64,000 bases of DNA from Rhodosorus marinus CCMP1338. Taxonomy: Eukaryota > Plantae > Rhodophyta. Positions 29 through 42,178 of this stretch are shown piece by piece. The position numbers and the translations under genes were made by a program. The notes beneath the pieces were generated by a model that saw nothing but the letters and a program-made list of their open reading frames with translations, was not told where the DNA came from and searched no databases. Each line of letters starts with the position of its first letter. The stretch's first letter is position 1. The stretch covers positions 1,612,001 to 1,676,000 of the forward strand of contig JAMWBK010000009.1 in assembly GCA_029953675.1 (NCBI GenBank). The letters are read 5' to 3'.

Positions 29-3000
29 GTTGTCCCGGTCACTGTCGTGTCGGGAACTGATGACAACGCCAAGCGAGCTTTTATCGATCAACTTGTGACG
101 AGCCTGCCCAGCTTACGGATCTGCAGAGTATCATTGTCTAGCAGCAACGTTGCCCGTCAGAATGGCGAAGAAACCGCAGTGGGAGAGAGCTCCGCGGGGA
201 GCGATGGAGAGAACGGACCGGCGGCAGAGGGAGAAGTTGATGAAGTCGCAGAAGAGAACGGACATGCAGAACAAGAATCAGAGGTATGTCGTTGTTGCTT
301 CTGAGATATCCACGGGCTCATGTTCTTCTGTCGCTAAGTCGTGATGGTTTCATAACAGGCGCGGGTTCCCAGTGACACCGTAGTCGATTCCTGGCATCTC
401 TGCCAGTCATTACCAAGCGCGATGCAAGTATTAGAGACCGTGTCCCAATTGGACGGTTGTGATTATGTTATCCTTGAGACAGGTAGTGACGTGTCGGAAA
501 TGAAGGAAATTGCGTCGAAGATTACGATCCTTCAGACAGCACGAGTGGATGCGTTTGTAACTGTTGTGAACGCCGAAAACTTTCTGGATGATCTGAACAT
601 AAGCACAGAAGGGGACACGGTAAGTGCGCATGTTCCGTTTTCTGTAGCATACGTAGAGCTATGCAGAAAAGCTAAGAACCCTACTCGAGAAATAGTTTGC
701 AAAGACGGAGTCGCGAAGGAATTGCTAGGCACTGTGCTTGTTTCGGCTTCCTTAATTGTTTACTCACTCCCGCATGGACGCTTTGCAGGTAAATGAGACT
801 GGGGCTGGACAGAACTTGCAAAAGGCGACGAGCTTGGTGACGTACATCGAGAGTTCGAATATTATTATCCTTACTGCTCCAAACAAGACCGCGACGAACG
901 AGTCCTTGACCCATGTTGAAGGACTGATTCGAAGCCTGAACTCTACCGTAAACATCGTCGAACTGGTGGAGGCGAGCATACTTGCTGATGAGATTGTGAA
1001 TACGAACATGTTCGACATGGCAGCTTTTGGCACAGCCGCTTCCTGGAAACGAGTACTCGCTGTGAGTAAGGGTGCGTTTGCTTGAAAATATATTAGCTAC
1101 ACCTCAGCTGGGCTGCTTGTACACGTGCTAAAAACTACGAGTTCTTCCGAATCTGTTTTTCACGCTCGGTAGAGGCTGAAGCGGAAGAGAAAACTGTGAG
1201 ACCTCTAACCAAGGACCTCAAGGACTGCACCTTTTTGTATCAAGGCAAGAGACCTTTCCATCCGCAAAGGTTTTACGATAACATAAAAGACATGAGGACA
1301 TTTGCTGGAGTCATCAGGTCAATAGGTGAGTTGCGAAGGAATTTCAGGGGAAGGATGTTCCCTCCTTACGGATCGAGTTCAGATGAGACCTTGCAGAAAT
1401 CGCTGAGTTGCTAAGTTTTTCTCGCATTGAACAGGGCAACTGTGGCTAGCCACGCGGATGAACTATCCTCTTGCATGGAATCAGGCCGGGGGGACGATAG
1501 CACTTAAGCAAGGCGAGCGATTCTGGGCCTCCGTCCCGGAAGAGAAGTGGCCAGGTGAGATTAGGGATCTTGTACTTGCGAGATGGGACGAAAGGTACGA
1601 ATGCTGCGTTGATACTTGCGCAACACCCATGCCCCGTGTGGGTTAGGCTATGACCTTGCTGATGGATAGAATGCTCTTGACGCACGAAGGTTTGGTGACA
1701 GGGAGACGGAGATTGTGTTCGTTGGGAGAAACATAGACAAGCAGAAGCTGCAAGGACTCCTGGATAGTTGCCTTCTCCAAGATGAAGAGATGGTGTTCGA
1801 AAAGGCCTGGGAAAGCTTTGACGATCCGTTTGTGAACTTCGTACCACCGGAGGATGATATTGTTCCGATCGACGAAGAGGAACCGGAAGAATTCGACCAC
1901 ACTGCCGACTCCGAGGAAGCGGCTAAAGAAGTCCCGCAAACTAGCGATGATCCTCGTCCTGAAGTTACGGAGTCCGATCCATCTATTCAGGCGAGAGCTG
2001 AGTCGGACGGAGAAACGGAGGATGCGAACATAGCGGAGGAGCTGTCGGGCTCTAACCCGCGGAGTGAAGAGGGTTCGTGCTGACGCACGTACACGTTGGG
2101 GACTCGCACATCGAGCTCTTCCAAAATTTCTGTTGGTCCGCCTATCCTGACCCAAAGGTAATGGTCTTATCGTTTACACAGGAATTGTTGAAGACGTGTC
2201 ATCGGTGCCCCTGGAATTGTTGGAACGCATTTCGGAGTTGGACTTGCGGAAAGCCGAGTCCGACCTCCGCTTGAATCCACCCAGAAAGGAGTACGATGCT
2301 TCAGATGTTGTCATTGCGTCGGGGGATCAGCGCGTAGCGGATGATATCTTGAGACAGATTCCTAACCGAGGATTAGCTGTGACTGTGGTCACTGGTTTTC
2401 TCGGGGCTGGGAAGACTAGCCTAATTAACTATATTCTAACTCAGGTGAGCTGCGGCAATTGCGACCGTCGCTTGACTTTTACGAGTCTACTTAACAAGGC
2501 TCAATTCTCCGGCTTTTCTCTGCATCGAAAAGAATCATGGCATGAAGATTGCAGTACTAGTGAACGAGTTTGGCGAGATTGACATAGACAGTCAGCTCGT
2601 TGAAACGGAATGGGCTGATGACGACGCGATCCTGCTGAACAATGGATGTATTTGCTGTACTATTAATGACTCTTTCCTCGAAGCCGTCTATCGAGTACTG
2701 AGAAAGTCTTCAATGGTGAGGCGACTTTGGAGTTTTGCGGATCGGAAAAGGAGCCAGCTCGGCGCCTTGGTTGCTGATTGTACAATCGGTTCATACGTGA
2801 CTAGGTGGACTACTTGATTGTGGAGACTACTGGAGTTGCGGACCCGGTACCGATAGTTAACTCTCTTATGACGACGGACTTGGAGGAACTGGTATATGTG
2901 GATAGTATTGTCACGCTGGTCGATGCAGAACATTATGATCCTAGGACTCACATGAACAGCGATGCTGCTCTAAGCCAAGTTGCAGTTGCAGATATTGTAC

Positions 3001-3858
3001 GACTTCCCTACAGGGTCTGGAGCTGGATTGAACTTCTCTTTCTCACAGCGACCGTTTGTCCTCCAATCGCAGATTTTGCTGTCGAAAACTGACATCGCTT
3101 CGGAGGAGAAGGTGGAGAGCGTTGTTAAGAGCATCAACGATTTAAGGCCAGGAGCGAGGATATTGAAGAGCCAACACGGCGCCGTTCCTCTCGAAATGAT
3201 CCTGGACGTAAAACCGAAGGCTGTGTCTGAAGCTTCGGAAGTGGCGGGGAAAGTGCTTGCGGTGTACGAAGACGAGGGCCTTGATCATAGCGATTGCGAC
3301 CATGAGCATGGCCAAAGCAACCATGACCACGACCATGACCACGACCATGACGATGATTTCGATCATAACGACGAGTCGAAACCGACCCACTTTGAAACCG
3401 ACGGTTTCATGTCTACATCATTTCAGTGAGTCTGCACGGGCAGCGAGAAATTCAAGAACGAGTTTGAGCGATGGCAGCGAAGATTGACTTTCGTAATACG
3501 TGCGAATTGCGCTTAGGACATTGGAACCGTTTGATCTGGACCTGTTCTTTGCCCGGTTTCTTGACTGCTTGCCTCCTGGTGTGTTCAGATCTAAGGGCCT
3601 CTTGTATTTCAAGGGGTATCCAAAGCGCTATGTTTTCCAACTCTCGGGCAGAAGGTATCAGTTCGAGGAGGACGACTGGCCAGAGGATGTTGGGCAAAGC
3701 AACCAGGTAAGTTTTCCTTCGAGACTAGTTCTGTCAAGCACAAAACCGACGAAAGACTCAAGTTCGAGCTGGTTTCGCAGGTTGTGGTGATAGGAAGGGA
3801 TTTGGACATTGAACAGCTCAAGGGAATGCTCGAATCATGTCGTGCTAGTGCGGCATAA
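29..3858 (+). CDS. Tandem COG0523 (CobW/P47K, G3E family) metallochaperone GTPase fusion, multi-exon, 5' end outside window: degenerate YciC-like module + acidic linker + intact CobW/YjiA-like module
   Basis: Module 1 (29-2072): VPVTVVSG, DYVILET, VDAFVTVV, RPFHPQRF, GQLWLATR..WNQAG..FWASVP..WP..WDERFGDRETEIVFVG..LDSCLL (CobW_C). Module 2 (about 2350-3858): VTVVTGFLGAGKT, IAVLVNEFGEIDID, GCICC, ETTGVADP, SKTD, His-rich HDHDHDHD linker, RSKG..FQLSGRR. An in-frame GT-AG intron at 2073-2157 joins them. Confidence 0.88.
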
Positions 3859-4036
3859 TGGCCGGGGAGAAGTTGGTTGATACTGAAACAGGACAAGTAA
3901 TTAAATGGTTGTACGCGAGTATTCGCAAGTTAAGTTTGTTGTTGAGCATGGTGTTAAAAGTTCTACATTGATCAGATGCTGTTGTTCCAGCGTTGCGGAA
4001 GTTTTGGAACCCTCGATTCACGGGCGTTCCTCTCAC

Positions 4037-4147
4037 ACTCCGCTAAAGAACACAAAAAAAAACCGTTTGCTGGAGAACAGGGAGAGCTTCCTTCGACTCC
4101 GCTAAAGAACACAAAAATTCCCCCGTTTGCTGGAGAACAGGGAGAGC
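4037..4147. repeat. Imperfect tandem duplication (about 60-bp period) between the convergent CobW and Pta 3' ends
   Basis: ACTCCGCTAAAGAACACAAAAA...CCGTTTGCTGGAGAACAGGGAGAGC occurs at 4037-4087 and 4096-4147. Confidence 0.85.
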
Positions 4148-4235
4148 GCTGTTCCCATACTCAGAAGTTCCTTCGAACCGGTTCCCATTAAGAGGGTTGT
4201 CCTTTCCAGCTGTATAGGAGCGAAAGATCTGGAAG

Positions 4236-7200
4236 CTACTTGGGGGTCAACGCCGAGGTGATTGCTATGGTGTTGACCACGTCCTGGACGGTTGCTCCAC
4301 GTGGGAGATCCGCGACAGGATGATCCATACCGAGTACAAGGGGACCAATAGCAGTAGCTTTGGTCGACTGCTGGACTGCCTTATACGTATTATTACCTGT
4401 GTTCAGGTCCGGGAAAATGAGAACATTAGCCCGCCCAGCAACACCATAGTTTTCACCCTTGACTTTCGTTTTCGCGACACTCGGGTTGACAGCAGCATCA
4501 TACTGGGTGGGTCCAAAAATTGGTACATTCGGTCTCTTCTCCCGCGCGAGTTTTGCGGCGGCCGTTACCTACGGAAAGGACACAACTTTTGAGACTGAGC
4601 TCTCCAATAAGCGGTTTGCGTTCCCGGCGGAGTTTCGCACGTCTAATGATTGCGGAGAATCTGGATAATCGGCTCGCCTACCTTTTCAATTTCAGGACCT
4701 TTGTTGCTGTCCCCAGTTGCGTAAGAAAGCATCGCAACCCTCGGCCGGAGGCCAACCCTTTCAGCTACATCGGAAGCACGGATAGCAATTTCCGACAACA
4801 ACGTTGAATCAGGATTTGCGTTCAGAGCGCAGTCCGCATAAATGAGGACTTCCTTATCCAGGCACATGAAGAACACTGAGGTCAGGTACTTTCCTGGTTT
4901 TAACATCAACTTCTTCGACGATAAAATCTGAGAAAAGAACCAGTCGAAAGGAAGGATTTTAGATTCTCTCGACAGCTAAGGTTCCTGACTTGTGTGCAAC
5001 GAAATTGAAAGTGCATCACGCTACCGTTCCCCTGGTCGGACGGTTGATTCCGCCAACAAATCCATCCGCATCCCCGTTCTTAACCATCATGGCTCCGTAC
5101 CAGTACGGATCCAAAAGTGTTTCACCAGCGATTTCCTCCGGAGTAGCAGGCCAGTACAGACTCTTATCAAAAATGTCCGCGTACTCGTCAAACTGGAAGG
5201 GGGGGGACAAGGACGCTCTATTCGTTCAATACCTCGCATGTAGTGTCGTCCTTTCGCAATCATCTACCTTGGGGCTCGTATGCGGATTTACAATCTCTAT
5301 GCCTCTGCTTTGCAGGCCAAGAGAAGCTATCCGCAGATTGATACCGTCAACATCCCCAAGCAATGTAAGTCGTGCGAGTTGCCGACGACACACTTCGTCG
5401 GCTGCCAACAGGATTCTATCGTCATTGACCTCGGGTACTACAATGTGGGCCTCCTTCTGCCTCGCAAGGGAGTTGACCTGGTGAAGGAACATCTTAACGG
5501 AAATGTGCTCCAGGGGTTTCTGTACGCCTGAGAGGAGTTTGTCCGTGTTGACATTCTCGTTGAACAATTTGATTGATCTTTCCACCTTCAAAATAGACAC
5601 GAGTCTCGTTCAGATTATTTAGACAGCTGAACTTTTAAGCTTGCTCAGGTCGGGCCAAGCGCGTACTTTGCCTGAGTACGCGGTCATTTTCGTTGGTAGC
5701 TGCTCCAAACGATCCACCAGCTCGAGCGGTTCGATATCTGTTTCCAGAACTGGTACCTTCATGAGCGCCATGAGAGCTGGTGTATCGCTTATCGTTTTTA
5801 GTGTGCGTTCTGTGATGTCACTACTCGACTTGCCGCTCAGAATTATCCCTCCAAGCACGCCACCTAGAATCGCGCAGAGGTCTTAGTCAATCAGCCGCTC
5901 AGTGGATACCTCCATGTCAACCTGTGCTTGCCAGTTCTTCTCGTGCTGACTTACCATATTTTCTCGTTGCGTTCAAAGAGGTGATGGCAAGAACAATGTC
6001 CACTCGGTCTTTGGCGGTAATGAGCAGAAACTTGGGAGGTGTGCCTTCTAAATCAGACTCAATCACAAACCCGTCCATATCCGCATCTATTTGATCGACC
6101 ATTGCAATAATCATTTCTTCTCTGAAGGTTGGATGCAGCAAGCTGATAGCCTCTGCAACCCGATCATTTGGCAACCTGTGATCTACGAAGAGACGGGTAC
6201 ATCCAGTTTGTGGGCATGGTAAGTCTTCTCGTTACCATCTTCAGTCGAGAGACGAGCAACGTGGGAGAACTATCCCGTTCGTACCAGGACCCTGCGCTAT
6301 CTGTTCCGTGATCATCTTCTTCAGTTCTGCCCTACTTCGATCTATCGCAACCACTGGATTGTTCTCCACTCTATCGATCATCGTATCGATTCGCTCTGAT
6401 ACGATTCTGAGATCATCTAGGAGCAGAGGTACGTCCATGCCTTTCCCCTCTCCAAAGACCAAGTTGGCTTCCAAGCCCTCCAGGATATCGCGGAACATTA
6501 TCGAACGTAGGTAGCCATCCAGCGGAATCGAACCAAGGATTGGGACCTTGGTCGCTTTTTCAACGTTGGCCTTCTCAACATCAAAGTCTGGTGCAGCACT
6601 CGGATAGCGGTTAAGGATCACTCCAAGTATGTCCGGGTTGTGTTGCTGTAGCACAAGCAGCCTTTCCGATAGCAATCGAAATTTAGTGCGCAAATCTAGC
6701 ATGTTATCAGAAAAAGAGTTCCAGCGTCTGATTTTAGGTTTCCAAGCATGTGTTGATGGGAGCCGGTGGTACCTTACCATCAGATTCAGCAATAGAAGAA
6801 TTATCTCTGCCATCGCTTACTAGTACCACGGACGCGCCGATGGCGTTTGCACAGTTCATGTTGATCTCATTATTGAGCTCCTCACTAAAGTTTGTGCTGT
6901 TGTAGCCCTCGACTACAACAAAATCGTAGTCTTTTCGGAACTCGGAGAATCTACTAGCAACCATTTCATTGAGAGTTTCGAAATCTTTCTTGTTCACCAG
7001 CCTAATCGCTTCCTCGACGCTGCATCCATTCTGGACGCCGGTGTCGAAAATTGTTTCCACAAGGCCCGTGTGCGTTTCCTTCAAAACATCAAGAACACAT
7101 GAATCAGAGCGTCGACCATTGCCAATTCCCTTGTGAGCTTGGATAGCCTATTACCGTCGGCGCACGTGAAGCGTGCTCGATTACTCGAAAGTAGCCAACA

Positions 7201-7403
7201 GACCGCTGCTTGGTCTCCATGAGTTTCATAGTCCCCAGAAGAACTGGGACAGTATTGCATCTTGTAGACGATGGCTGGAGGAATATTGAATTCCTCCCCG
7301 TCGAACCAGCAAACTCATCAGTAGAGTAACAACGACGACGAATCGTCGGAGTGAGCCGGATTTCCGTCAACCGCCAACGACCAAGCCAACGAAGGCCGAT
7401 CAT
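4236..7403 (-). CDS. pta: Long-form phosphate acetyltransferase homolog (BioD-like N-domain, DRTGG-like region, PTA_PTB domain), multi-exon, probable mitochondrial presequence, active site degenerate
   Basis: ATG at 7403 with Arg-rich MIGLRWLGRWRLTEIRLTPTIRRRCYS. SVGYFRVI; DYDFVVVEG; GDADG; SVFFMCL..YADCA; RVAMLSYATG; QYDAAV; VLIFPDLNTGNNTYKAVQQS; TAG at 4236-4238. Confidence 0.9.
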
Positions 7404-7943
7404 CTTCGATACCAGCGATTGTAATTCAATCCTACAGTTTTTCCATCGAGTCCAGTTATTTTAAAAAAAATCAGCCTATAAGTTATTACTCGCCGACTCA
7501 CCACAACCTGTTTCAACATCGATGACTTCTTCTCCCCAAAGCCACGGATCATTCCCTTCCCCACCAATGTTTACCAAAATCGATCCATTCTGGTTTAACG
7601 GAAAATACCGGAATCTTGATACCCCAATGAGATTCTTGTTTGACCCGTTGTCACTTCACAGGATTCTCGAAGAAGATTGTGTGTCCTGAGAATCGCGGGT
7701 TGTTCCTTTTTTACGACCTGCAAGTGGTTAAGCCCACGCGAAAACGGGGGGCGGGGGGTTTATGGAGAGGTTGGGAAATAAGTGGGCAATAGAGGTGGGC
7801 AATAGGCGATTGCAGTGCGTCCATCGAACATTTGGTCAGGTGGGCAGTGGAATTTTAACGAATATCGCGGGCTTTTAGTGGGCAACGCAAAAAGGCTCTT
7901 CTGCTTGCCTTTCCTTTCTTCATGGGCAGACAAAAAGTCAGTT

Positions 7944-8295
7944 ATGTCCGCTCCCTCGCGCTTTCCGCTTTTCGAAGCGGCGCTCGAACAGGCAGACTCT
8001 GGCGGTGAAGCGGATCTCCAGCGGGCCGCGGTGAGCGTCCCCTGCGATCATGTACCGATCGCACCTCTGCAGGTGCCTCTTGAGGCGTTCCAGTTTGTGC
8101 TTACCGGTAGGTCGAAATGCTTGCTGATCAGCATAGTCTTGATCTCGTCGTGCCGCGGATTTTGCCGCGTTGGCATCCGGAAGTTTTCCGGCCATTGCAG
8201 TGTGGCGTTATTCCTTTGTTCTTGCCATCTGTCGTAGTAGTTCTGATTCCTGGGACGATTTATCAACCACCTCAAGATCACATGTATTCAATTGA
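7944..8295 (+). CDS. Hypothetical small spliced protein, divergent from pta
   Basis: ATG at 7944 after a G-rich leader (7741-7810), MSAPSRFPLFEAALEQADSGGEADLQRAA, good donors GTGAGC (8031) and GTAGGT (8107). No recognised domain. Confidence 0.3.
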
Positions 8296-11200
8296 AAGGA
8301 GCATACAGTCCTCTCTTTGACAGCAGAGTATGTCAAACCATAGCCATCGGCACATTCACATTTGCAAATTTTCCGCGATTCCCGGCACTCACAGAATATA
8401 TTCAAACACGCAAGAAAAATATATGCAAACTTTATGACCAATAGAAGAGGCCTCAGGTTCACATCCACCATTCATAATCCCTTAAGAAACCCCAAATCCT
8501 TATCATTGGTAACCATTGCTCTAATAAAAGTATAAAAATAGACTATCATTCGAAATACTACTTTATACAAATTAATCTTTTCATTTTATCCAATGAATTA
8601 TCGTAAGTATATCCATTAACCAATCATTGAATTGTCCACAAATTCAGAACGGGTCCTACCCAAGATGGGCTCTAGTTTCCACGGCATAGTCGATTCTGTG
8701 CAATGAACAAGGGTTTGGAACGCGTTTTGATGTGGGTGTGGCGGACAGGGTCAACAGATACCACCTCCCGGTTGGAGTAAAGTTCTCGTTTCTACTTGGC
8801 ATGGGCAAGAGCAATTGTGAAATATTGTTTAGCTATTTTCGCGGGCCGGGCTGGCATTTCATGTCATGTGCAGCCCTACTAATAGGGTTTCCGATCACTA
8901 CGCTCCTGGTCAGAGTCGAATGTGAGAAAGATTCATGCTACCTACCTTTGGCTTTGATCTGGAGGGTGTAGGGGATTCTTATAGGTGGGCTTGATAATAA
9001 GGTGAAGCGGAGCAGAAACTGGTCTGCTCTCGAACGAGTTGCGAAGGTATTCCATTGTACGCTTGTTAATTTTTTGGTCTGTGATGCTGCTTGGTGTCAT
9101 GTCTGGCCTCACCTGACTGTAGAAGTTCCAAGAGCCGCTGTGAGTCTCCTGTGCTCGAGTTTTGCATGATGAGAAAAATCAAGTACGCCGTTAGTGCATA
9201 CTCGGTGCAGTGGGACCGTGCGTCCAAAGGTGGCGTCTGCGTTTGAATTTCCTTGCGCTACTTGCTCCGGTACAATGAATCAAATTCATTTTAGAAATAG
9301 AAACACGTCCGTTCCGTTGGGCCTCAATACCAACGTCGACGGTTTCAGTGGTTGTACAAGCTCCCTTGTCAACAACACACCCTGTGCCTTTCAATTCGCA
9401 TATAGGAGGTGACTCCAATAAATACGCACCGAAGTCGAGGCATGGCAGATCGGGATAAAAAGCTCAAAAGAGGTTCAAGCTGGGGGGGTTCGACCGCGTG
9501 GCGGTCAATTGCAAGCCGGAAACGAAACTGTCTTCATTTGCTCGTCTGAAAGAATGAAGAAAATCGTTAAGATGCTTGAAGACATGAATGGACAAGAGAG
9601 GTGTGGACCCCAGTTTAGACCATAACCCGTTCAAGAGAACGCTACTTTTCTCATTCATGAATCTGCTCTACCGAAACCAGTCAAACCCGTCGTACAAGAG
9701 GGAAGTTGCCCGTCTTCCTAACAACAAGACCTAAACTCAACCTTGGCATCTCCAACGATTGGAAGACCCGGAGAGGATAGACATGGCAAAAAAACCATCA
9801 ACCAGTCCAAATCAAAATCGATTTCCACCTTTATTTCATACTCCGATTATAACACATCCTCTAGGCCGGCGGGACACAACTCAAAAGAGTCCCCTTCCCC
9901 CACCCACCAACTCTCGGTGGCCATCAAAAATCTAATGACCCTTTTCCTGCATGAAAAAAACTACAAAAAGAAGCCAATTCCCGAGAGGAGGGAGGCGGTT
10001 TTTCCTCCTTTTTCAGAATTTATTTTGAATATTCAATGTTTGTACCAAAAAAGGAAGAAAACTGGATACATAAAAGTAAACTTTATTTTCGATTCTCCGT
10101 GTAATTCTCCTGACTGGTTTGGGTACTGATCCTACCCCTGGGTTTTTCAGTATTAGAATGAAGTATTGAATAATTTTCCTTTTTCGCAAGGATAAGTAAT
10201 CGGAGTCATAGTCGTGATCTTACCCCTTGAATATGTTGTTTGGGGAGAGACCCCTGGTAGTTGTAAGATTTCCGTTCCGCTGTCGAGCGGTTTTCGCTCG
10301 ATTGGGTTTTTGGGAAACGCGGTGGCGGAATATTGCGGTTGCTCGTTTATCAGCGACAAGCGTGTTAAATCGGGTGAGGGAGGAGCTTGAAAAATGCGGT
10401 AGGGGGTTGGGAGAGGCGGGACACGAGACAATACAAAGCACTTCTAAGGCTGTACTCTTCCTCATCAAATTGCGTAAAATCTTTTTGGGATTTGAGGTTT
10501 CTGTTTCCTTTCCCCGATCATCATCGTCTCTGAATGGTTAGTTGAACACATGCGCTTACTCTCGTTAAAGATAAGAAGATATGGCGAGCTAGAGCGTGTG
10601 GTAATATTATAGATCAGACTCTCTAGCCTTTGGAAACCAAATCAAAAGGCAACAAAGTCACTTCCGCAGTAGGCCTTTGTCGCCCCCGCCCGTTGGCTCG
10701 ATGGCAAATCCGTTTCGTCTAAAAGGCAAGAGCTATCCAGTTAAAATATCTGTTGAATATCTATGCAAGTTACGTATGAACGTACGTAATTGGCTAAAAA
10801 TCCAACTTGAACGAATCATATCCTCCTGAGTTCTACAGCTCTTCCTACTGGATAAACAACCTACAAAATATCCAATTATCAATAAGTACCCCTTCTATTT
10901 CAATACTTCAAGAAAATTATCATACTCGTTTTCTACGGGGAGGTGCCATGCACACCTCCCCGACAAACAAAATACAAAAAACAATGAAAATACCAATATA
11001 ATTCATCGATCCTCATCTATTTACGAGGGGTAAAAGAGATGGCCAAAACACTTACCCCTGAGATTTTTTGTCTTCGGAGTATTTCATTTGGTAGTAGTTT
11101 TGTGGAGACAATTTTTGCTTCAGCCTAAATTTTTTTATTTTGAAATAGGAGGGAAGCGTTTTGCTTCGTCGACGATTAAGATTTACACCCCCCTTTGTAA

Positions 11201-19145: not shown

Positions 19146-22100
19146 ATGGCTGACGGACAGGAAAAAAGTGAGACCCTTGAGGAGCTTCGTGCGCTCATTC
19201 CCGGGACGAAGTTCGGAAATGATGTGAGTAGACCCGAGGTTTCCTAACCTCAAAACTTTTCACCAAACCTGCGTTTCCGTATTTCCCTGGTAGATTGTGC
19301 TTGTTGGCTTTGGTTAAAGTTCCCTATTAATAATCGGTTGTCGTTCTTTGGCAATAGGCGAGCACAAACCGCACCACGCCGGCTGCAACCAGAAGACCAG
19401 CTTCGCAGAAGATGCAGCCCGAGATGAGATCCGCTGCAGGGTTGCATCAACAGGTAATTTGGAAATGGTTGGTTGAATTTGTGATCATGTGTGTGGATCT
19501 AAGCTGTAGGTCATGTGCTTGACTGACTGCAATAGGCTTTTCCGGCTCAAGGCATGGGCACCGGCCCGCCCGCAATCGCACATCAAACGGGAGCTCCTAA
19601 CAATGTAAGTGATACTCGAGCTTTCCGCTTTGGTTCCAGTCCGTCTGGAGACCAGTTGTTGCCGCACTTGTGAAACCTGGTAGCAGGCAGCTGACAAAGT
19701 ACGTGTGACAACGCCTGCTTACACAGAACCCTTCGAACGGAACCGAGAAAGAGTTGATGGCTTTGATCGATTCTACGAAGAAAAGAGAACCGAGTTCCGG
19801 TGCGTCTAGGAACGTTGACGAGTTGAAGCAGTTAATCGGGAATACAAAAGCGAGAGCGGCCTCTGCTCCTGGCTACAGTGCTCCCACGGCGACGAGAGCG
19901 CCAGCAACCAGCCCCCAGAGCGGGAGGAGGACTCAAGCTGAGGTCTGTCGTTGCCCTACACTTCATAGTCGTCCTAAGCTCAGGTCCTCACACCTACCAT
20001 GGTCCACGTGTGCATTTACGTAGGGCGCTGGAAGCACTGCGGGCGAACTTTGGTCCTTGATTGGAGACAATAAGCCCAAAAAGGAATCGACTTCAAGCAC
20101 TTTGGCGGAGCTGAATGCTCTTGTCAGCAGCACGTCTGCCTCGGCTGCGAAGACGGGGACCAGACCAAGCAATTACAAAAAGCCGCCCACTCCCACTGCT
20201 CAGCCGGTGACGCCCCATAGTGCACCAGTCCAACCCAGAAGTGCTACAGCCCAACCCAGAAGTGCCACAGCCCAACCCAGAAACGCTGCTTCAAAGCCTG
20301 TAAAGAGGGTTCGGGTAGGCCTTATTTGTGATTTTCGCAATACTTGGCGGGCCTTTGCGGATCTTGCTCATGTCCGTGATGACCTTTCTCATGTGGCCTG
20401 AGCAGAAATGGACGAAAAACTGCGAAGAATTGCTAACGCGGATTCGAAATTTAAACGCGGCCCCAAGAACAAGCGTTCAAACAGCAGCATCTGGCCCAAC
20501 CACGGTTGCCAAGCCAGCTTTAGGAAGACCCCGTCAGCCGTCGAAGGCTGAGTTGAGAAGTTTTCGAAGTAGGAAAGTCCTCCCAGTTCTCAGGATGGTT
20601 GCCACATCTGGATTTTCAAAGTTTATTCCACTTGCGCGCACCCTCAAACAAGCTATTCTTCCTCCCAACAACTTGCAGTGCGAAGTGGGAATGTTGATGA
20701 ACTTAGGAGGAGGTTGGGCCTGCCTCCCATGAAGTGGGACGTTAGTCCTCAGGTGCAGAGTGCTACTAGAAGTATGACCCAATTCATTCAATCCTCGGTG
20801 TTCTTTTCTTGCATACGCTTTGCGGCGCAAGTACTAACAGTGACTCACTCTGCGCAGGACCACCACAAGGCAGTCTTGAAGCATTCTTGCATTCAGTGGT
20901 GTACAAATACAAACAGAGGATTATGTCGTCGACTCGAGATGACAAGGAGACCACTATTCGCGCTTTTCAGACTCAGGTTCAGCAATTGTTTAAAGAGTAT
21001 AGGACAGGTCGAATGCCCAGTGACAAGGTACAAAACAAGGGAAGAAAGTTTCGTATCTGGTCTGATGTTTTCGTCGCTCACTGCAGTTGGCGCAAATCTT
21101 CTCGACTATTTTCTGTTCGCCGAATCTAGGTTGTGGAAGTCGTTTGTGGTAAAGGCCGCGAGATTGGTATGCCCGAGATAGATACAATGCGGCAAAAGTG
21201 GTATGCGAATGCAAAGGAGAGAGCCGCTATGGCAGGCGGCGCAGTAGGCAAAGCGAAAGGAACGGAAGCGGCAAAACCGGCAGAGACCCCAGCAGCCTCG
21301 GATTCCGTCTCGGCGGGTGCTGCGAATGTCCCGGAAGGAAAGCCAGCGAAAGGTCGCGGGTCGATTGGTTGCAAGAAGGGTAGGTTGGAGCTCGGGCAAG
21401 CAGGCCAAATGACAACCTTGTGAATAGTTGGCGGAGTGTTATTTTGTTGCCCTCTTGTCTAATACTCTTTTTGCAGCTCCAGCGCAAGAACCTAGACAGG
21501 CAAACGGCAAGGTTGGAGAAGGGACACCTAAGCGGACCACGAAGAAACCCGGGGTTGCAAATGTGCCTGGTGCGAAGGCGACTACCGGTAAGGCGACCGC
21601 TACGAAAGCGACCGCTGCGAAGGCGACGGCTGCAAAGACTGCTGCGAAAGCGACTGCCGCAAAGACTGCTGCGAAAGCGACTGCTGCGAAAGCGACTGCT
21701 GCGAAAGCGACTGCTGCGAAAGCGACTGCTGCGAAAGTGACTGCTGCGAAGGCGGTCGCTGGAAAGCCGATAACTTCGAAGGCGACCGCCGCGAAAGCGA
21801 CCGCTGCCGCGAAGGCGGCTGCGGCAAAGTCTGCGAAGGCGACGGCTTCAAAGTCGACACCGAAGAACACTCCTTCGAAGGCTACTGCGGCGAAGTCCTC
21901 TACTCCGAAGCCGAACCGAGGCTCGGCAAAATTATCCGCTGGTGAAGCGAAGTCCGCGGTACGTCGCAGACAAATTGACTAGGCACTGTTTTATCTGTGA
22001 ACTCATATTTGCGTACACCATTGTAGGAAAAGACGCCGGCAACACCCGTGGAATCGGAGGATCCTGCGCTTGTTGAGGAAGATCCTCAGTCCTGGGTAGT

Positions 22101-23173: not shown

Positions 23174-23529
23174 AGGACCGACAGGATCGTTCGAAGCTCT
23201 CTGGCATCAGCGTCGGACACGCTGTGCTTGGGAACTATTCTAGACAAATTTTTTTTTGAATGTGTACTAGCTTACTAGAATGCTATGGATGATCTCTGCG
23301 TTCCTTTTTTTTTTGTTTCAAGCGCGATGACCATGGAATGCTCGCGCCCACATGCGTACCGACACTGCCCACCTTGCATAATGATATAAACTAAGAAAAG
23401 AAGAGTGGCAGTTGCTTGGCGGTTGTATCGCAGGGCAGGATCTTGATGACACGGGAGACGTTGTTCACCCTGGGAAAGGTGTCAACAATAACACTGAAAC
23501 CCTGCTAGGACCGGCCTCAGCGGACACTG

Positions 23530-23549
23530 GGGTTACGTTAGTCTGGGGT
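23530..23549 (+). repeat. Left copy of exact 20-bp direct repeat GGGTTACGTTAGTCTGGGGT (candidate target-site duplication)
   Basis: Identical to 25729-25748; lies immediately before the first recognisable RT codons. Confidence 0.8.
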
Positions 23550-25728
23550 AGTAGTAGAGGGCTTGACAAACGGCAGGAGCCTGCTGTCAGACCTATTGGC
23601 GTTCCTGAGGTCCTACGAAAGCTAGCGACACAGTGGGTACTAGGTCACCTGACCACACGACTTCGGGAGCTCCTCGTCCCCCTGCAACTAGGCCTTGCCG
23701 TCAGTGGAGGTTGCGAACGGTCCCTGCACGCAATACAGGCCCATCTCTACTGTGAACCACAATCGGCAGTTCTACGACTCGACCTGGCGAATGCGTTCAA
23801 CCGAATTGATCGGCGTATTGCAAAACAACTAGTCGACCGCCATTACCCAGAGCTGGCAGCCATCTACCGCCTGGGATATGGAAGCAACTGCGAGGACTCA
23901 CCTACGCTCCTAGGCTGCGCCCCAAAGCTACAGACGGCACACTGCACCCAGATCGACTACACCTGCAAGCGCAGACGGGAGTACAACAAGGAGATCCTTT
24001 GGGACCTGCCTTACACGCCCTCACTGGCGCCTTTTCTCGAAGCAATGCGGCAGAAACACCCTGAGCTGACTACTGTCGCCATCCATGACGATATCACGCT
24101 CGTGGGCCCCCTGGAGTCAATGAAAGCTGCCCTACTGTGTAGTCAAAATGCCCTCCCTACCATTGGGGCGGAACTACAACCTCAAAAGTGCACCCTATTC
24201 GGCTACCACATAGCATCACCTCGACTGGTTAGCAGATACATGCCGGACCTCAATGTTTCTCGCGAAGGAGTAACCAGACACTCCATTCCCATTGGGACGA
24301 GAAAATATGTGGAAGAAGCTTTGAGAACACTACAAAACAAGCATGAAACACCGGGCAAAGAGATTGCCCATCTGCCTCCTGAAGAGCTCAACACACAACT
24401 GGCGCTGTTCCGATACTGCTCGGAAACGAGACTTGACTACACCCTAAGGACAGTGGCTTACCACTACGGCAGAAGTTTAGCACGTGAAGCGGACTACAAC
24501 ACACGACTACAGTTGGAAAGGCTACTAGGCTGTCTACAAACAGCCCATGCGGACGACCCTGACGGAACGCACCCGGCTTGGAAGCAGGTAGCACTCCCCT
24601 GCCGATGGGGGGGACTGGGATTCTGCACTAGGAGTCCCGCTCCCAAATCCTAGTGGCAACTACAGCCATTAGGGGGAGACTGAGACCGGAAACCAGCCCC
24701 CGAATAAGGCAGCTCCTCAACCCCACGTACCTGACTGCTGCCCCTCCAGCAAATTCCCCCCCTGACCAGTCTGCGGTGAAGCAAGGTTCCTTACAGCAGA
24801 CCCTCTCAAGAGAGGCACACCTTACTGCTTTCACCCGACTGGTCACGGATCCCTTACTCGACCCGGAACATCGTGCCCGAATCCGTTCCGTTGCAGGCGT
24901 CTGGCTAAGAGATTTACCACAATTCGGAGCCCGACTGAGTGGGAGAGGCATGCACCTGAATATCCGACAATTGCTGGGTCTCCCGATTCGGGGACTGCGG
25001 ACGACGGAGAGGTGTACTACGTGTAATAGTACACACCGTACGAACGGTGTACAAAGATTCCATCATTGTCAGACCTCGACTGGGCTCTGGCAACGGCGAC
25101 ATGATCAGCTCTGCACTGAGCTGGCGCGTTGGCTTAACAGATGGCAGTTCAGAGATGTTCAGGAAGAACCTACAGACTACTTCACGAACTCGAATCTACG
25201 ACCTGACTTGGTAGCTATACACCCTCGGACATGGCAACGATTTGCGATCGATGTGACGGTGGTGTCACCCCTACAGGCGAGACACCAACCCAACAGCAAA
25301 GACAACAATGGTTATGCAGCAAAACAGGCGGAGCGTTGGAAACTGCACACTACAAGGAGGCGATGGTGACAGAGCATCCAGATGACAAACTGATTCCGAT
25401 TGCGATAGAAACCTTCGGCCGAACGGGGCAGATGACCCAAGACTTTCTCCGAGAGGGCTGTGGGCACATGCTAACTAAGCAGTACGAGTTGAGCAACGTG
25501 CGGGCTCAACTAAACAGAACACTTTGGGCAGGGAACGCAGAGCTCGCGTTAGGGGCTTTGCGCGTGGATCAGTCGGACCAGCCACTGATCCCTTATTTTT
25601 CTTTTTTATCGTAGCTAGAGACCCCGGGAGACGGGGTTAAACACACACATTTTCCCTAGATCTTGATAGAATTAGTGTTGCCCTGCACTAGGCATTTGCC
25701 GAGTAAAGTTTACAGCTACGTTAGTCTC
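23550..25728 (+). mobile_element. 5'-truncated CRE/SLACS-clade non-LTR retrotransposon (RT + CCHC + restriction-like endonuclease), inactivated by frameshifts
   Basis: GLDK..VRPIGVPEVLRKLA; LVPLQLG; LRLDLANAFNRIDR; GVQQGDPLGP in a shifted frame (23978-24007); IHDD; ALPCRWGGLG; CTTC...HHC; RHD; RPDL; IDVTV; IPIAIETFG; stop at 25612-25614. Confidence 0.88.
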
Positions 25729-25787: not shown

Positions 25788-26850
25788 AGACTTTTGAACA
25801 GCCAACTTCAGATTGGTCGGACAGACCTGCCTATGGAGTGAGTTAAATTATCAAGTCCTTAACATTCGACCATCTGCAGTGAGCTTTTCTTTCACATACA
25901 AGCTAAGAACGATTTTTTCTTTTGAGTTAATTAGCTACCACCGCCACTTTCGAGTCCATTCTTCATTTCCCAATCCCAACTGGACTCAACGGCCTCCGCC
26001 GGAATTTGATCAGATCCAACTCCACAGGCGCAACTCAAATGTCATATGACCAATTTGCTTTGATCCTTTTTTGGGGGGGGGAAAACCGAAATCACGTTCA
26101 ATAAATACAATCTAAATGATATCAACCCGCGGACTAAATAAAAGCCATTGGCCAATTAAATTCCAGTTACCTGATCGGGAGTCGGTTTTGACCAATCATC
26201 GTATAAACAAATCGTGCTCCTCAACAACGATTCGATAAGCATAGCCGTGCAAATATTTTTGATATTCAAATATGATCGCCCCCTGAGATATTATTCGTCT
26301 TCTCTTTCAACTTGTAGCTCAGGGGATGAAAACACATAAAAAACAACCTACGGTTATTATTATTTCCACAAAAGCATCAACTTCGATGAACTCACTAAAA
26401 CAATCCACCCCTTTACTAACCTCAACGTCAGAACATTAAAAAACACTTAAATCTACGACGGATATTTTCCTTCAAAATTATTTAGTCTTTTCTTAAAAAA
26501 GCGATAAAATCGATTAGCGAATCAACGAATGGAAAAATCCACGAAACCGGTGGCGGACGGTAACTTTAATATTGTCATTAAATAATCCGCAAATCCTTGT
26601 TAGTCCCTGTTAGATTACTTCCGAAACAAGGGTTTTTCGTAGACCGCCTTGAGTACCACACTCAAATTTGGTTATTTTAAGATCGATTTTGTGCGTATTT
26701 TCGGCGGGTTATATTAGGCAATAGAGGGTTTTAGGGTTTTTAGGGTTTTTGTTTTTGTTTAAGTGTTTTTTGTTTTTTTTGGGTGGAGGAAGAAAAAGAC
26801 TGAAGTCCGAAAGTTTGGTGAGAGACTCTGTGTGCGGGACCCCGCACAGA

Positions 26851-26878
26851 GAGAGAGAAAAGACACACACAGAGAGAC

Positions 26879-26912
<34 letters not shown>
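26851..26912. repeat. (GA)n/(CA)n compound microsatellite upstream of serA
   Basis: GAGAGAGAAAAGACACACACAGAGAGACAGAGAGACAG followed by a (AG)n run. Confidence 0.9.
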
Positions 26913-26917
<5 letters not shown>

Positions 26918-41289: not shown

Positions 41290-42178
41290 TCTGAACCTAT
41301 CCCGAGCGCTGGCAACCCTATAAACAAAACCCTAACCCGTAATCAACCCAAAATCGCTCTACACATTCTTCCTCCAGGACAAACCTAACCAACCTCCTGT
41401 CCTTCAACAAACTAGAGCTATCTATATACAACAAAATTTACATTTAAAACCACAGCGAAAGTCTGTGAAAACCGTGCTCAATAAATCTTCAGGCCATCCT
41501 CACCCTCCGCAGGCTATCTTCACCATCCTCAACTACACGAAACCTCAAAAAGAAGCACCCCACCTACCTACAACGAAACTAGGTTGAAAGCTGAATGTCC
41601 CATATCCCGGAAACTTTTGGCTGGCCAATACCGTGTGGCGAATGATACCCGATCCGATTTCCTCCTCCACAGGTCGTTATATCGCTCAACGTCTTCTTTA
41701 TTCACGATATATTAGTGTTTATACTTTATATTTAATTTTATTGCATAAAACTTGTGAGGGCTCGTAGTGCCTTTTTATTTTTTTTGATGTTCGGGTCTTT
41801 TCGAGCAAATCTGGACGACATCTTCGGTGCGAATGGCAAGGGAAGAGGGGCTGTGAAGCAATGGCCTAGTCTGCACTCTTGCGGGTTGCTATGACGCATG
41901 GCTTGACGTATCTCATTGCGAGGATGCGTCATGAGGTTCTTGTGAAGACCATAGGTGTAGATCAAAGTTTAGTGAGTTAAGATGGTCATTGTGGGCTAAT
42001 TTGAGCGGTTCGGTATGTGAGTGGTTGTACAGGGATAAGCGAGCCGTGGTTGCAAAAATCGTTTGGGCTGATTTTTTCATGGAGGTGCTGCATAAAAATA
42101 GTTCTTTAGGTGATTTGCGAAGATGACCTTGGTACTTTCCATTCATCGACTCTCAAATCGAGCGGATCTGCACAGGAC

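What the first reader, a model, noticed from the sequence alone, without database searches (positions are those of the whole stretch)
29..3858. Pseudo-GTPase + active GTPase: two different COG0523 zinc-chaperone modules spliced into one protein
Seen: the two CobW-like ORF sets that look like separate genes are joined in frame by an intron at 2073-2157 (GT..CTGAC..AAG), reading SEE-G-NGLIVYTG-. Module 1 lacks Walker A (VSGTDDNAKR in place of GFLGxGKT) and the CxCC metal site (HLCQSL at 395-412 in place of GCICC), yet keeps a well-conserved YciC/ZagA-type CobW_C domain. Module 2 has intact GFLGAGKT, GCICC, ETTG and a His-rich linker. Known: COG0523 proteins are GTP-driven Zn/Co/Fe metallochaperones reported to dimerise. 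Inference: a covalent heterodimer in which the dead module acts as a client-binding or regulatory partner. The two modules appear to come from different subfamilies, so fusion is more likely than duplication.
Basis: partly seen in the sequence, partly recalled or inferred. Interest (0 to 1): 0.72.

Follow-up and report, generated by a model that had tools for sequence, protein, structure and literature searches.

The report
Fused dead-plus-live metallochaperone GTPase gene
A red-alga gene really does join two different metal-chaperone GTPase modules into one protein, the first with its GTP and metal sites destroyed yet kept under selection in every major red-algal class, an arrangement of a known chaperone family that none of my literature searches found described.

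Summary
Window 29-3858 (+) is the 5'-cut part (917 codons, 12 exons) of a red-algal (Rhodosorus-like) gene. It encodes two complete COG0523 modules in one reading frame. Two Rhodosorus marinus transcript peptides read ...EEG|IVEDV... across the junction. Florideophyte and Porphyridium genomes carry the same two-module protein as one uninterrupted ORF.

Module 1 has no Walker A, no switch I, no CxCC and no [NST]KxD motif in any red alga examined. It is still predicted to keep the YjiA fold and is under purifying selection. Its C-terminal domain is as conserved as the live module. Module 2 has every motif. Its nearest non-red-algal relatives, sampled in two genomes, are cyanobacterial COG0523 genes in Zur/ThrRS-type zinc-starvation clusters.

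The modules share about 20% identity and fall in different COG0523 clades (100% bootstrap). That indicates an old fusion of paralogues, not a duplication. The fusion occurs from Cyanidiophyceae to Florideophyceae and is split in Pyropia.

The "covalent G-domain heterodimer" remains untested. An adaptor role for the dead module is my preferred, inferred mechanism. I found no paper describing this architecture.

The parts
29..283 (+). Exon (first in the window; gene is cut at its 5' end). Encodes beta1, pseudo-P-loop, alpha1, beta2 and the start of the acidic insert of module 1
   Evidence: AG at 27-28; tblastn to P0001 residues 91 onward; model
47..76 (+). Pseudo-P-loop VSGTDDNAKR in place of GxxGxGK[ST]
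   Evidence: hhalign pairs it with TGFLGAGKT of module 2; no GK[ST] in any of the 18 homologues covering the site
137..379 (+). Acidic low-complexity insert replacing switch I (NEFGE region); spans intron 284-358
   Evidence: Variable in length and sequence across the family; pLDDT below 50
359..619 (+). Exon 2
389..412 (+). SWHLCQSL: degenerate CxCC site, one Cys left
   Evidence: hhalign pairs DSWHLCQS with NNGCICCT; WISCSS in florideophytes, WVSV in Pyropia
461..496 (+). DYVILETGSDVS: remnant of Walker B / switch II (hhhhE[ST]TG)
789..1071 (+). Exon 3; includes IIILTAPNK (861-887) in place of the [NST]KxD strand
1173..1325 (+). Exon 4; start of the module 1 C-terminal domain
   Evidence: P0001 reads LAVSKEAEAEEK across 1071/1173
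1196..1849 (+). Module 1 CobW_C domain of the long ZigA/ZNG type (WLATR 1443-1457, GDRETEIVFVG 1694-1726, CLLQDEEMVF 1769-1798); spans two introns
   Evidence: Pfam CobW_C 66 bits; ZigA profile positions 120-389, 189 bits; 59% identity to florideophytes, as high as module 2
1435..1594 (+). Exon 5
1690..2072 (+). Exon 6; end of module 1 CTD and the acidic inter-module linker
2073..2181 (+). Inter-module intron (phase 1, GTTCGT...CTGAC...ACAG) with an in-frame TGA at 2081-2083 if retained
   Evidence: P0001 and P0020 read EEG|IVEDV; branch A at 2150 is 31 nt from 2181
2182..2444 (+). Exon 7; conserved pre-G-domain segment and P-loop of module 2; contains no Met codon
2394..2417 (+). Walker A GFLGAGKT of module 2
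2533..2715 (+). Exon 8; NEFGE (2563-2577) and GCICC (2644-2658)
2805..2996 (+). Exon 9; DYLIVETTGVADP (2808-2846), Walker B / switch II
3073..3425 (+). Exon 10; LSKTD (3079-3093), end of the G domain, and the His/Asp-rich linker (3286-3375)
3517..3706 (+). Exon 11; module 2 short YjiA-type CobW_C domain
   Evidence: Pfam CobW_C 66.5 bits; YjiA residues 255-312
3781..3858 (+). Last exon, with stop TAA at 3856-3858

Best explanation
Shown.
- Window 29-3858 is most of a nuclear red-algal gene for one protein of about 1,000 aa. The protein consists of two complete COG0523 modules, each a G domain plus CobW_C, joined by an acidic disordered linker.
- Module 1 descends from the long-CTD ZigA/ZNG-like branch. 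It has lost Walker A, switch I, CxCC and [NST]KxD, so canonical GTP hydrolysis and canonical metal binding are excluded by sequence. It keeps the predicted fold and is under purifying selection, and its C-terminal domain is as conserved as the live module.
- Module 2 descends from the cyanobacterial branch. Its relatives there, sampled in two genomes, sit in zinc-starvation-type clusters or beside a ThrRS gene (FUR regulator, ThrRS, FolE, HisI and CysRS paralogues in one; ThrRS in the other). It keeps every catalytic and metal-binding motif plus a His/Asp-rich linker.
- The fusion is present in Cyanidiophyceae, Compsopogonophyceae, Stylonematophyceae, Porphyridiophyceae and Florideophyceae. 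It is split into two genes in Pyropia.

Inferred.
- The protein is imported into the plastid, because orthologues start with the red-algal F-based presequence.
- Module 2 is the working GTP-dependent Zn (or other metal) insertase.
- The dead module serves as a permanently attached adaptor. Its conserved CTD, on an inert G-like scaffold, supplies a second protein-binding surface that selects or holds the client, or tunes module 2.
- Whether the two G domains touch each other is not known.
For: Fusion:
- Transcript peptides P0001, P0020 and P0002 span both modules.
- Single uninterrupted ORFs occur in L001, L002 (florideophyte-like contigs) and L003 (Porphyridium).
- No Met codon lies between the end of the module 1 CTD and the module 2 P-loop.

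Dead module:
- Motif columns across the family.
- Pfam cobW scores only 22.7 bits, over the second half of the profile.
- phmmer finds no PDB hit, yet hhalign to module 2 gives probability 98.4% over the full length.
- AF2 pLDDT is 85-96 and module pTM 0.79. YjiA is the best Foldseek hit, E 2.7e-12.

Selection:
- dN is 0.08-0.12 (m1 G-like), 0.067 (m1 CTD) and 0.054 (m2 G), against 0.31-0.38 in the linkers.
- Deep identities are 24-28% (m1 G core), 59% (m1 CTD) and 65% (m2 G).

Different origins:
- NJ split with 100% bootstrap, m1-m2 identity 19.8%. NCBIfam and PDB profiles agree.
- Cyanobacterial hits share 44-50% identity with module 2.

Zinc link:
- Gene neighbourhoods L004 and L005.
- Anabaena thrS2/all4722 forms a Zur-controlled operon (PMC4787780).

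Plastid:
- AF[VI]xP lies near the N terminus in eight orthologues, and Pyropia P0190 begins MATSFVAS.
- The F-based motif is described in PMC7038456.

CTD as an interaction domain: PMC11672702.

Distribution. Pyropia split.
Against: - No experiment or read data from this organism. The junction evidence comes from a relative whose protein is 90% identical.
- The N terminus of this copy is outside the window, so targeting is inferred from orthologues.
- The metal is not identified, and COG0523 members also handle Co and Fe.
- The adaptor role rests only on conservation and on a general statement about COG0523 C-terminal domains. No client is known.
- In Cyanidioschyzon, module 2 itself lacks CxCC. 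There the pair cannot work through the canonical metal site.
- dS is saturated (1.4-2.2), so dN/dS values are rough.
- Timspurckia has a module-2-only transcript with its own presequence. The modules can therefore exist apart.
Confidence: 0.6

Rival explanations
1. The two G domains pack against each other as a covalent pseudo-heterodimer, in the manner of HypB/UreG or SRP54-FtsY dimers. The dead G domain acts as a built-in activator or brake of GTP hydrolysis and metal release by the live one.
For: - Other G3E and SIMIBI GTPases work as nucleotide-dependent dimers (PMC11672702).
- The Foldseek lists include HypB, UreG and the SRP54/FtsY heterodimers.
- Full-length AF2 pTM is 0.52 although 28% of residues are disordered. 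That is more than module 1 alone could contribute (0.79 x 427 / 1017 = 0.33). My inference from this is that the model places part of module 2 relative to module 1 with some confidence.
- Both modules are retained even where split, as in Pyropia.
Against: [quoted passage not shown]
- The part of module 1 that would form such an interface (P-loop, switch regions, CxCC) is the part that decayed or was replaced by a disordered insert.
- The module 1 G-like core is the least conserved folded part (24-28% deep identity). The CTD is the best conserved.
- No contact map or PAE could be obtained.
Confidence: 0.2
2. The fusion is facultative. The main products are separate proteins: module 1 alone by retention of intron 2073-2181 (stop at 2081), and/or module 2 alone from an internal start. 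The fused form would be a minor read-through isoform.
For: - An in-frame TGA lies 9 nt into the intron.
- The donor GTTCGT is the weakest in the gene.
- MMETSP assemblies contain partly spliced transcripts of this gene (P0020).
- Pyropia and Timspurckia encode stand-alone versions.
Against: - P0020 retains two other introns but has this one removed.
- No Met codon is available for module 2 before its P-loop.
- Intron-less florideophyte, Porphyridium and Cyanidioschyzon genes can only make the fused protein.
Confidence: 0.1
3. Module 1 is not nucleotide-free. Like the YjiA-like C1-C2 domains of Shulin/DNAAF9, it binds a nucleotide non-catalytically as a structural ligand between its G-like and C-terminal domains. 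This is compatible with the adaptor model.
For: - Shulin is the second-best structural match of module 1 (6zyx_Y, E 7e-07).
- The Shulin paper reports a nucleotide between C1 and C2 that 'plays a structural role' (bioRxiv 10.1101/2020.09.04.282897).
- There are weak Pfam DAAF9_2 hits.
Against: - The Gly-rich loop and the Lys/Thr of Walker A are absent in all family members. So is the guanine-specificity [NST]KxD motif.
- The Foldseek match to Shulin may only reflect common descent from COG0523.
Confidence: 0.1
4. Module 1 is a decaying relic of a duplicated or captured gene, carried along with no function of its own.
For: Loss of all catalytic motifs and low Pfam score of its G domain.
Against: - dN of module 1 is a quarter to a third of the linker's.
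- Its CTD is 59% identical between Rhodosorus and florideophytes.
- It is retained in every red-algal class sampled, kept as a separate gene in Pyropia, and duplicated in Porphyridium.
- It is predicted to fold with high confidence.
Confidence: 0.02

Closest known systems
COG0523 metallochaperone GTPases (E. coli YjiA; cyanobacterial Zur-regulon members such as Anabaena all4722)
   Same: Module 2 has the complete motif set and domain order. It hits YjiA at E 6.7e-39 and shares 44-50% identity with cyanobacterial CobW-family proteins. The two cyanobacterial loci sampled lie beside FUR/ThrRS/FolE/HisI/CysRS paralogues or a ThrRS gene.
   Different: Here the module is the C-terminal half of a eukaryotic, probably plastid-targeted protein, and it is preceded by a second, dead COG0523 module.
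ZigA / ZNG1 / ZNG2 branch of COG0523 (long C-terminal domain; ZNG2 is the plastid family of green plants)
   Same: Module 1 matches the ZigA profile from position 120 to the end (189 bits). It clusters with stand-alone long-CTD proteins at 100% bootstrap. ZNG2 is plastid-localised and has a His-rich linker, and is said to occur in some red-algal genomes (PMC10642216).
   Different: Module 1 lacks all GTPase and CxCC motifs, which ZNG1 and ZNG2 keep. The His-rich linker sits in module 2, which belongs to another clade. Orthology to ZNG2 could not be tested because no reference sequences were retrievable.
Shulin / DNAAF9 C1-C2 domains
   Same: A YjiA-like two-domain module reused as a non-enzymatic structural part of a larger protein. 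It is the second-best Foldseek match for both models.
   Different: Shulin is fused to Spt16-like domains and packages dynein arms. It is not paired with a live COG0523 module and has no link to metals.
IcmF (G3E GTPase MeaB fused to its client mutase)
   Same: A G3E metallochaperone permanently fused to a partner polypeptide (PMC11672702).
   Different: In IcmF the partner is the client enzyme. Here it is a dead copy of the chaperone fold itself.
Chlamydomonas CBP1 / HCR1 (CobW/CobW_C + WW regulators)
   Same: COG0523-derived proteins, one lacking the G domain, that are used for regulation through protein contacts (bioRxiv 10.64898/2026.09.01.748463).
   Different: Nuclear or cytosolic, with WW domains and no tandem COG0523 arrangement.
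EngA/Der double-GTPase
   Same: Two G domains in tandem in one polypeptide, including a chloroplast form.
   Different: A TRAFAC-class ribosome-assembly factor in which both domains are active. It is unrelated in sequence.

Membership tests
COG0523 (G3E P-loop GTPase; Pfam cobW + CobW_C): module 2 | Walker A GxxGxGK[ST] | tested here: met
   GFLGAGKT at 2394-2417
COG0523: module 2 | CxCC metal-binding motif between switch I and Walker B | tested here: met
   GCICC at 2644-2658; aligned to YjiA GCICC
COG0523: module 2 | Walker B / switch II hhhhE[ST]TG and [NST]KxD | tested here: met
   LIVETTG within 2808-2846; SKTD within 3079-3093
COG0523: module 2 | CobW_C C-terminal domain after a variable linker | tested here: met
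   PF07683, 66.5 bits; cobW 177.6 bits
COG0523: module 2 | GTP hydrolysis coupled to metal binding or transfer | not testable with these tools
   Needs purified protein
COG0523: module 1 | Walker A GxxGxGK[ST] | tested here: not met
   VSGTDDNAKR at 47-76; no GK[ST] in any of the 18 homologues covering the site
COG0523: module 1 | CxCC motif | tested here: not met
   WHLCQ at 392-406; one Cys at most, none in Pyropia
COG0523: module 1 | [NST]KxD and switch I | tested here: not met
   IIILTAPNK aligns with IILLSKTD; switch I is replaced by an acidic disordered insert
COG0523: module 1 | Common descent and fold (G3E G domain + CobW_C) | tested here: met
   hhalign probability 98.4% over the full length; CobW_C 66 bits; AF2 model best matches YjiA, E 2.7e-12. 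The fold is predicted, not solved
Pseudo-GTPase (G-domain fold, catalytically dead, functionally retained) | G-domain fold kept, G motifs lost, sequence under purifying selection | tested here: met
Pseudo-GTPase | No nucleotide binding or hydrolysis | not testable with these tools
   Needs a binding assay; the Shulin precedent shows a structural nucleotide is possible
ZigA equivalog (NCBIfam NF038288): module 1 | Full-length score above the curated cut-off (600 bits) | tested here: not met
   189 bits over profile positions 120-389 only
ZNG2 (plastid COG0523 of Archaeplastida) | Placement inside the ZNG2 clade | not tested
   No ZNG2 reference sequences could be retrieved; the held supplement of PMC10642216 is cut
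ZNG2 | Plastid localisation | tested here: inconclusive
   An F-based presequence is present in orthologues; the N terminus of this copy lies outside the window; there is no localisation experiment

The most novel reading that the evidence does not exclude
The red-algal protein is an obligate COG0523 pseudo-heterodimer. The dead module docks on the live one, in cis in most red algae and in trans in Pyropia, and gates its GTPase and metal release. That would be the first evidence that a COG0523 chaperone works as a dimer-like pair with a dedicated regulatory subunit.
Probability: 0.2. Interest if true: 0.75.

Novelty: new variant of a known kind. Interest (0 to 1): 0.58.

Why it matters
How COG0523 metallochaperones find their clients, and whether they act alone or in pairs, is still open (PMC11672702). 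Here evolution has welded an inert copy of the fold to a working copy. It has kept the pair across all the red-algal classes sampled and has separated them again in one lineage. That offers several handles:
- a natural cis/trans pair for testing module-module contact;
- a C-terminal domain whose conservation points to a binding function;
- a candidate plastid zinc-delivery factor in the lineage that gave rise to the plastids of diatoms and other major marine algae.

It is also a clean example of a pseudo-GTPase in the G3E class. Practically, current annotations hide the architecture. [quoted passage not shown] Precomputed Pfam annotation misses the first G domain.

Tried and rejected
- Searching with the whole fused protein returned only 19 hits. 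I suspect, but did not test, that low-complexity words filled the candidate list. I re-searched each module separately.
- phmmer of module 1 against PDB found nothing. Homology had to be shown by hhalign and by fold.
- I looked for double-COG0523 proteins outside red algae among ten other long hits. Each has a single CobW module. Five are joined to NUDIX, Pyr_redox, DUF1826 (two proteins) or short-chain dehydrogenase domains, and the other five have no other Pfam domain.
- The idea that the ~500-aa red-algal 'stand-alone' hits to module 2 are paralogues was largely rejected. Most sit on contigs too short to hold the full gene, or include the end of module 1 (P0199), and they interleave with fused module 2 sequences in the tree. 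Only Pyropia P0190 is a clear stand-alone gene. Timspurckia P0200 probably is.
- dN/dS proper could not be computed because dS is saturated. I used dN relative to the linkers instead.
- Nine literature searches found no description of a tandem or pseudo-GTPase COG0523 or of the named accessions.
- The supplement of PMC10642216 is truncated in the library.
- Model coordinates and PAE are not exposed, so inter-module contacts could not be measured. No model files were present in /data when I listed it.
- Rfam and tRNA scans of the window were empty.
Full report
WHAT IS IN THE SEQUENCE

The region lies in a nuclear eukaryotic sequence with short GT-AG introns. Splicing twelve exons gives an open frame of 917 codons ending at TAA 3856-3858. 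The exons are 29-283, 359-619, 789-1071, 1173-1325, 1435-1594, 1690-2072, 2182-2444, 2533-2715, 2805-2996, 3073-3425, 3517-3706 and 3781-3858. Position 29 follows an AG acceptor, so the gene starts to the left of the window.

The best database hit is a transcript-derived peptide of the red alga Rhodosorus marinus (P0001, 1017 aa). It is 90% identical over 100% of the model and has about 90 further N-terminal residues. Pfam finds cobW and CobW_C twice each (E 2.7e-56 and 1.2e-37).

THE JUNCTION

P0001 reads ...SQGEEG|IVEDVS... across the junction. So does a second transcript ORF, P0020, probably from the same organism. That places the acceptor at ACAG|GA 2181, not AAG 2157.

The CTGAC branch A at 2150 is 31 nt from 2181. 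Four of the five other introns of this gene with a YTRAY motif have one 27-33 nt from the acceptor, and the fifth at 38 nt. The same A is only 7 nt from 2157. Either acceptor keeps the frame.

Three further observations bear on the junction:
- The intron carries an in-frame TGA at 2081.
- The exon that holds the module 2 P-loop has no Met codon, and neither does the acidic linker before it. Module 2 therefore cannot be made alone with its Walker A.
- P0020 retains two other introns but has this one spliced out.

THE FUSION IS NOT A SPLICING OR ANNOTATION ARTEFACT

- Florideophyte-like genomic contigs encode the two-module protein as single uninterrupted ORFs: L001 3001-6153 and L002 3001-6081.
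- Porphyridium purpureum does the same (L003 2001-5600).
- Named members are Galdieria sulphuraria Gasu_41680, Cyanidioschyzon merolae XP_005536923.1, Compsopogon caeruleus A0A7S1TII8, Chondrus crispus (a partial model) and Porphyridium 'putative metal chaperone YciC'.
- In Pyropia vietnamensis the modules are separate genes on different contigs. P0018 is module 1 only and P0190 is module 2 only, and neither locus holds the other module within 8 kb.
- P0190 has its own N-terminal presequence. It keeps the conserved pre-G-domain segment that sits in the linker of fused proteins.
- In the tree P0190 groups with florideophyte module 2. Together with the presence of the fusion in the early-branching Cyanidiophyceae, this argues for an ancient fusion and a later split in Bangiales. 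That last step is my inference from accepted red-algal phylogeny.

MODULE 1 IS A CONSERVED PSEUDO-GTPASE

Profile-profile alignment of the module 1 family against the module 2 family is significant over the whole length (probability 98.4%, E 6.5e-15, 20% identity). It pairs these segments:
- VSGTDDNAKR with TGFLGAGKT
- DSWHLCQS with NNGCICCT
- DYVILETGSDVS with DYLIVETTGVADP
- IIILTAPNK with IILLSKTD

None of the 18 homologues covering the site has GK[ST]. At most one Cys of CxCC survives. Switch I is replaced by a variable acidic insert.

Sequence methods barely see the G domain. Pfam cobW scores 22.7 bits, phmmer finds no PDB hit, and the precomputed Pfam annotation lists only CobW_C.

AlphaFold models it with pLDDT 85-96 outside the insert, and module pTM is 0.79. 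The model's best structural matches are YjiA (E 2.7e-12), then Shulin, then MeaB, SRP GTPases and HypB.

Between two florideophyte orthologues, dN values are as follows:

| Region | dN |
|---|---|
| Module 1 G-like domain | 0.08-0.12 |
| Module 1 CTD | 0.067 |
| Module 2 G domain | 0.054 |
| Module 2 CTD | 0.041 |
| Linkers | 0.31-0.38 |

dS is saturated, so ratios are rough.

Over deep divergence (Rhodosorus against florideophytes) identities are as follows:

| Region | Identity |
|---|---|
| Module 1 G-like core | 24-28% |
| Module 1 CTD | 59% |
| Module 2 G domain | 65% |
| Module 2 CTD | 56-60% |
| Linkers | 12-28% |

The inert G-like core therefore behaves like a scaffold, and the CTD like a functional surface.

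MODULE 2 IS A COMPLETE COG0523 OF CYANOBACTERIAL TYPE

It matches YjiA at E 6.7e-39 with all motifs aligned. Outside red algae its nearest relatives are cyanobacterial 'CobW family GTP-binding proteins' at 44-50% identity.

I sampled two of these loci:
- In Leptolyngbya the gene lies in a cluster with a FUR-family regulator, a ThrRS paralogue, DUF1636, FolE, a second COG0523, HisI and CysRS.
- In Nostoc it lies next to a ThrRS gene.

This matches the Zur-controlled thrS2/all4722 operon of Anabaena (PMC4787780) and the zinc link of COG0523 (PMC2770081). The metal for module 2 is therefore most likely zinc. That is an inference from relatives, not a measurement.

DIFFERENT ORIGINS

In a neighbour-joining tree (52 sequences, 308 columns, 200 bootstraps) the split {module 1 + stand-alone long-CTD ZigA/ZNG-like proteins} versus {module 2 + cyanobacterial proteins} has 100% support. 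Module 1 is monophyletic at 100%.

Module 1 matches the ZigA profile from position 120 to the end. Module 2 matches only its G-domain part, and scores equally on YjiA and CobW models. The exact sister of module 1 inside the long-CTD clade is unresolved, and I could not test orthology to plant ZNG2.

LOCALISATION

Eight orthologues carry AF[VI]xP near the N terminus, and the Pyropia module-2 protein starts MATSFVAS. Red algae use an N-terminal phenylalanine-based plastid targeting motif (PMC7038456). Plastid import is therefore likely but inferred, and the N terminus of this copy is not in the window.

MECHANISM

The 2024 review of bacterial metallostasis makes three relevant statements (PMC11672702):
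- COG0523 proteins may act as monomers.
- Their CTD is a candidate protein-interaction domain.
- The YjiA CTD would block a HypB/UreG-type dimer.

Combined with the conservation pattern, I favour an adaptor model. Module 2 would do the GTP-dependent metal transfer. Module 1 would contribute a second, conserved CTD on an inert scaffold that recruits or holds the client, or tunes module 2.

The only hint in its favour is the full-length pTM of 0.52, which exceeds what module 1 alone could contribute. No PAE or coordinates were available.

Two precedents show COG0523 parts reused as non-enzymatic modules. One is Shulin's YjiA-like domains with a structural nucleotide. The other is Chlamydomonas CBP1/HCR1.

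NOVELTY

The proteins are in public databases under generic names. None of the literature searches found a description of a tandem COG0523, a COG0523 pseudo-GTPase, or these accessions. Ten other long COG0523 proteins I checked have a single module. I rate it a new variant of a known kind, of moderate to good interest for metallochaperone and plastid biology.

LIMITS

- There are no reads from this organism.
- The fold is predicted.
- The tree is distance-based on sequences chosen by similarity.
- dS is saturated.
- The metal, the client and the inter-module contacts are not determined.

Noticed in passing
window 4037-4147: A unit of about 60 nt is duplicated in tandem about 180 nt after the stop codon. 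Two exact sub-repeats of 22 and 25 nt recur with spacing 59-60. It lies in the 3' UTR or intergenic region.
   Followed up: no
window about 4200-5500, minus strand: A phosphate acetyl/butyryl transferase gene (PTA_PTB, E 1e-20 for the ORF 4643-4906) lies convergent with the CobW gene.
   Followed up: partly
window 21567-21807, 23412-24653 and 26848-26913: A 15-nt unit is repeated 16.5 times, and there is an (AG)33 microsatellite. An ORF of 413 aa has a weak reverse-transcriptase hit (RVT_1, 21 bits, below the cut-off), possibly a retroelement remnant.
   Followed up: no
window 42110-43315 (+) and 58417-60231 (-): ORFs with a TruA-type pseudouridine synthase domain and an FAD-binding oxidoreductase domain. 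No tRNA genes and no Rfam families at gathering score were found anywhere in the window.
   Followed up: partly
L003 (Porphyridium purpureum) 1-1473 and 5516-5650: A module-1-only paralogue (P0023, 764 aa, pseudo-P-loop ISIVSGCDAALR) sits directly upstream of the fused gene. The last ~45 codons of the fused gene's CTD continue in another frame past the annotated stop, which indicates a frameshift or an unmodelled intron in the public model.
   Followed up: partly
P0027 (Cyanidioschyzon merolae XP_005536923.1), P0025, P0028: In this Cyanidiales-type variant, module 2 keeps a P-loop (GLPGAGKT / GAPGAGKS) but has no CxCC and only a partial cobW match. There both modules have lost the canonical metal site.
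   Followed up: partly
L005 (Leptolyngbya) 715-9179: A zinc-starvation-type cluster holds a FUR regulator, a 240-aa protein with a weak CobW_C hit and no G-domain hit, a metallophosphatase, ThrRS, DUF1636, COG0523, FolE, a second COG0523 and HisI. CysRS lies nearby.
   Followed up: no
P0020 (R. marinus transcript ORF): This assembled transcript begins inside the intron that corresponds to window 620-788 and runs into the intron after ...ILTQ (window 2445 onward). Incompletely spliced RNAs of this gene are therefore present in the MMETSP data.
   Followed up: no
P0200 (Timspurckia oligopyrenoides): A module-2-only transcript with its own Met and a presequence-like N terminus groups with Porphyridium's fused module 2. 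This suggests a second, independent split or an alternative first exon in Porphyridiophyceae.
   Followed up: no
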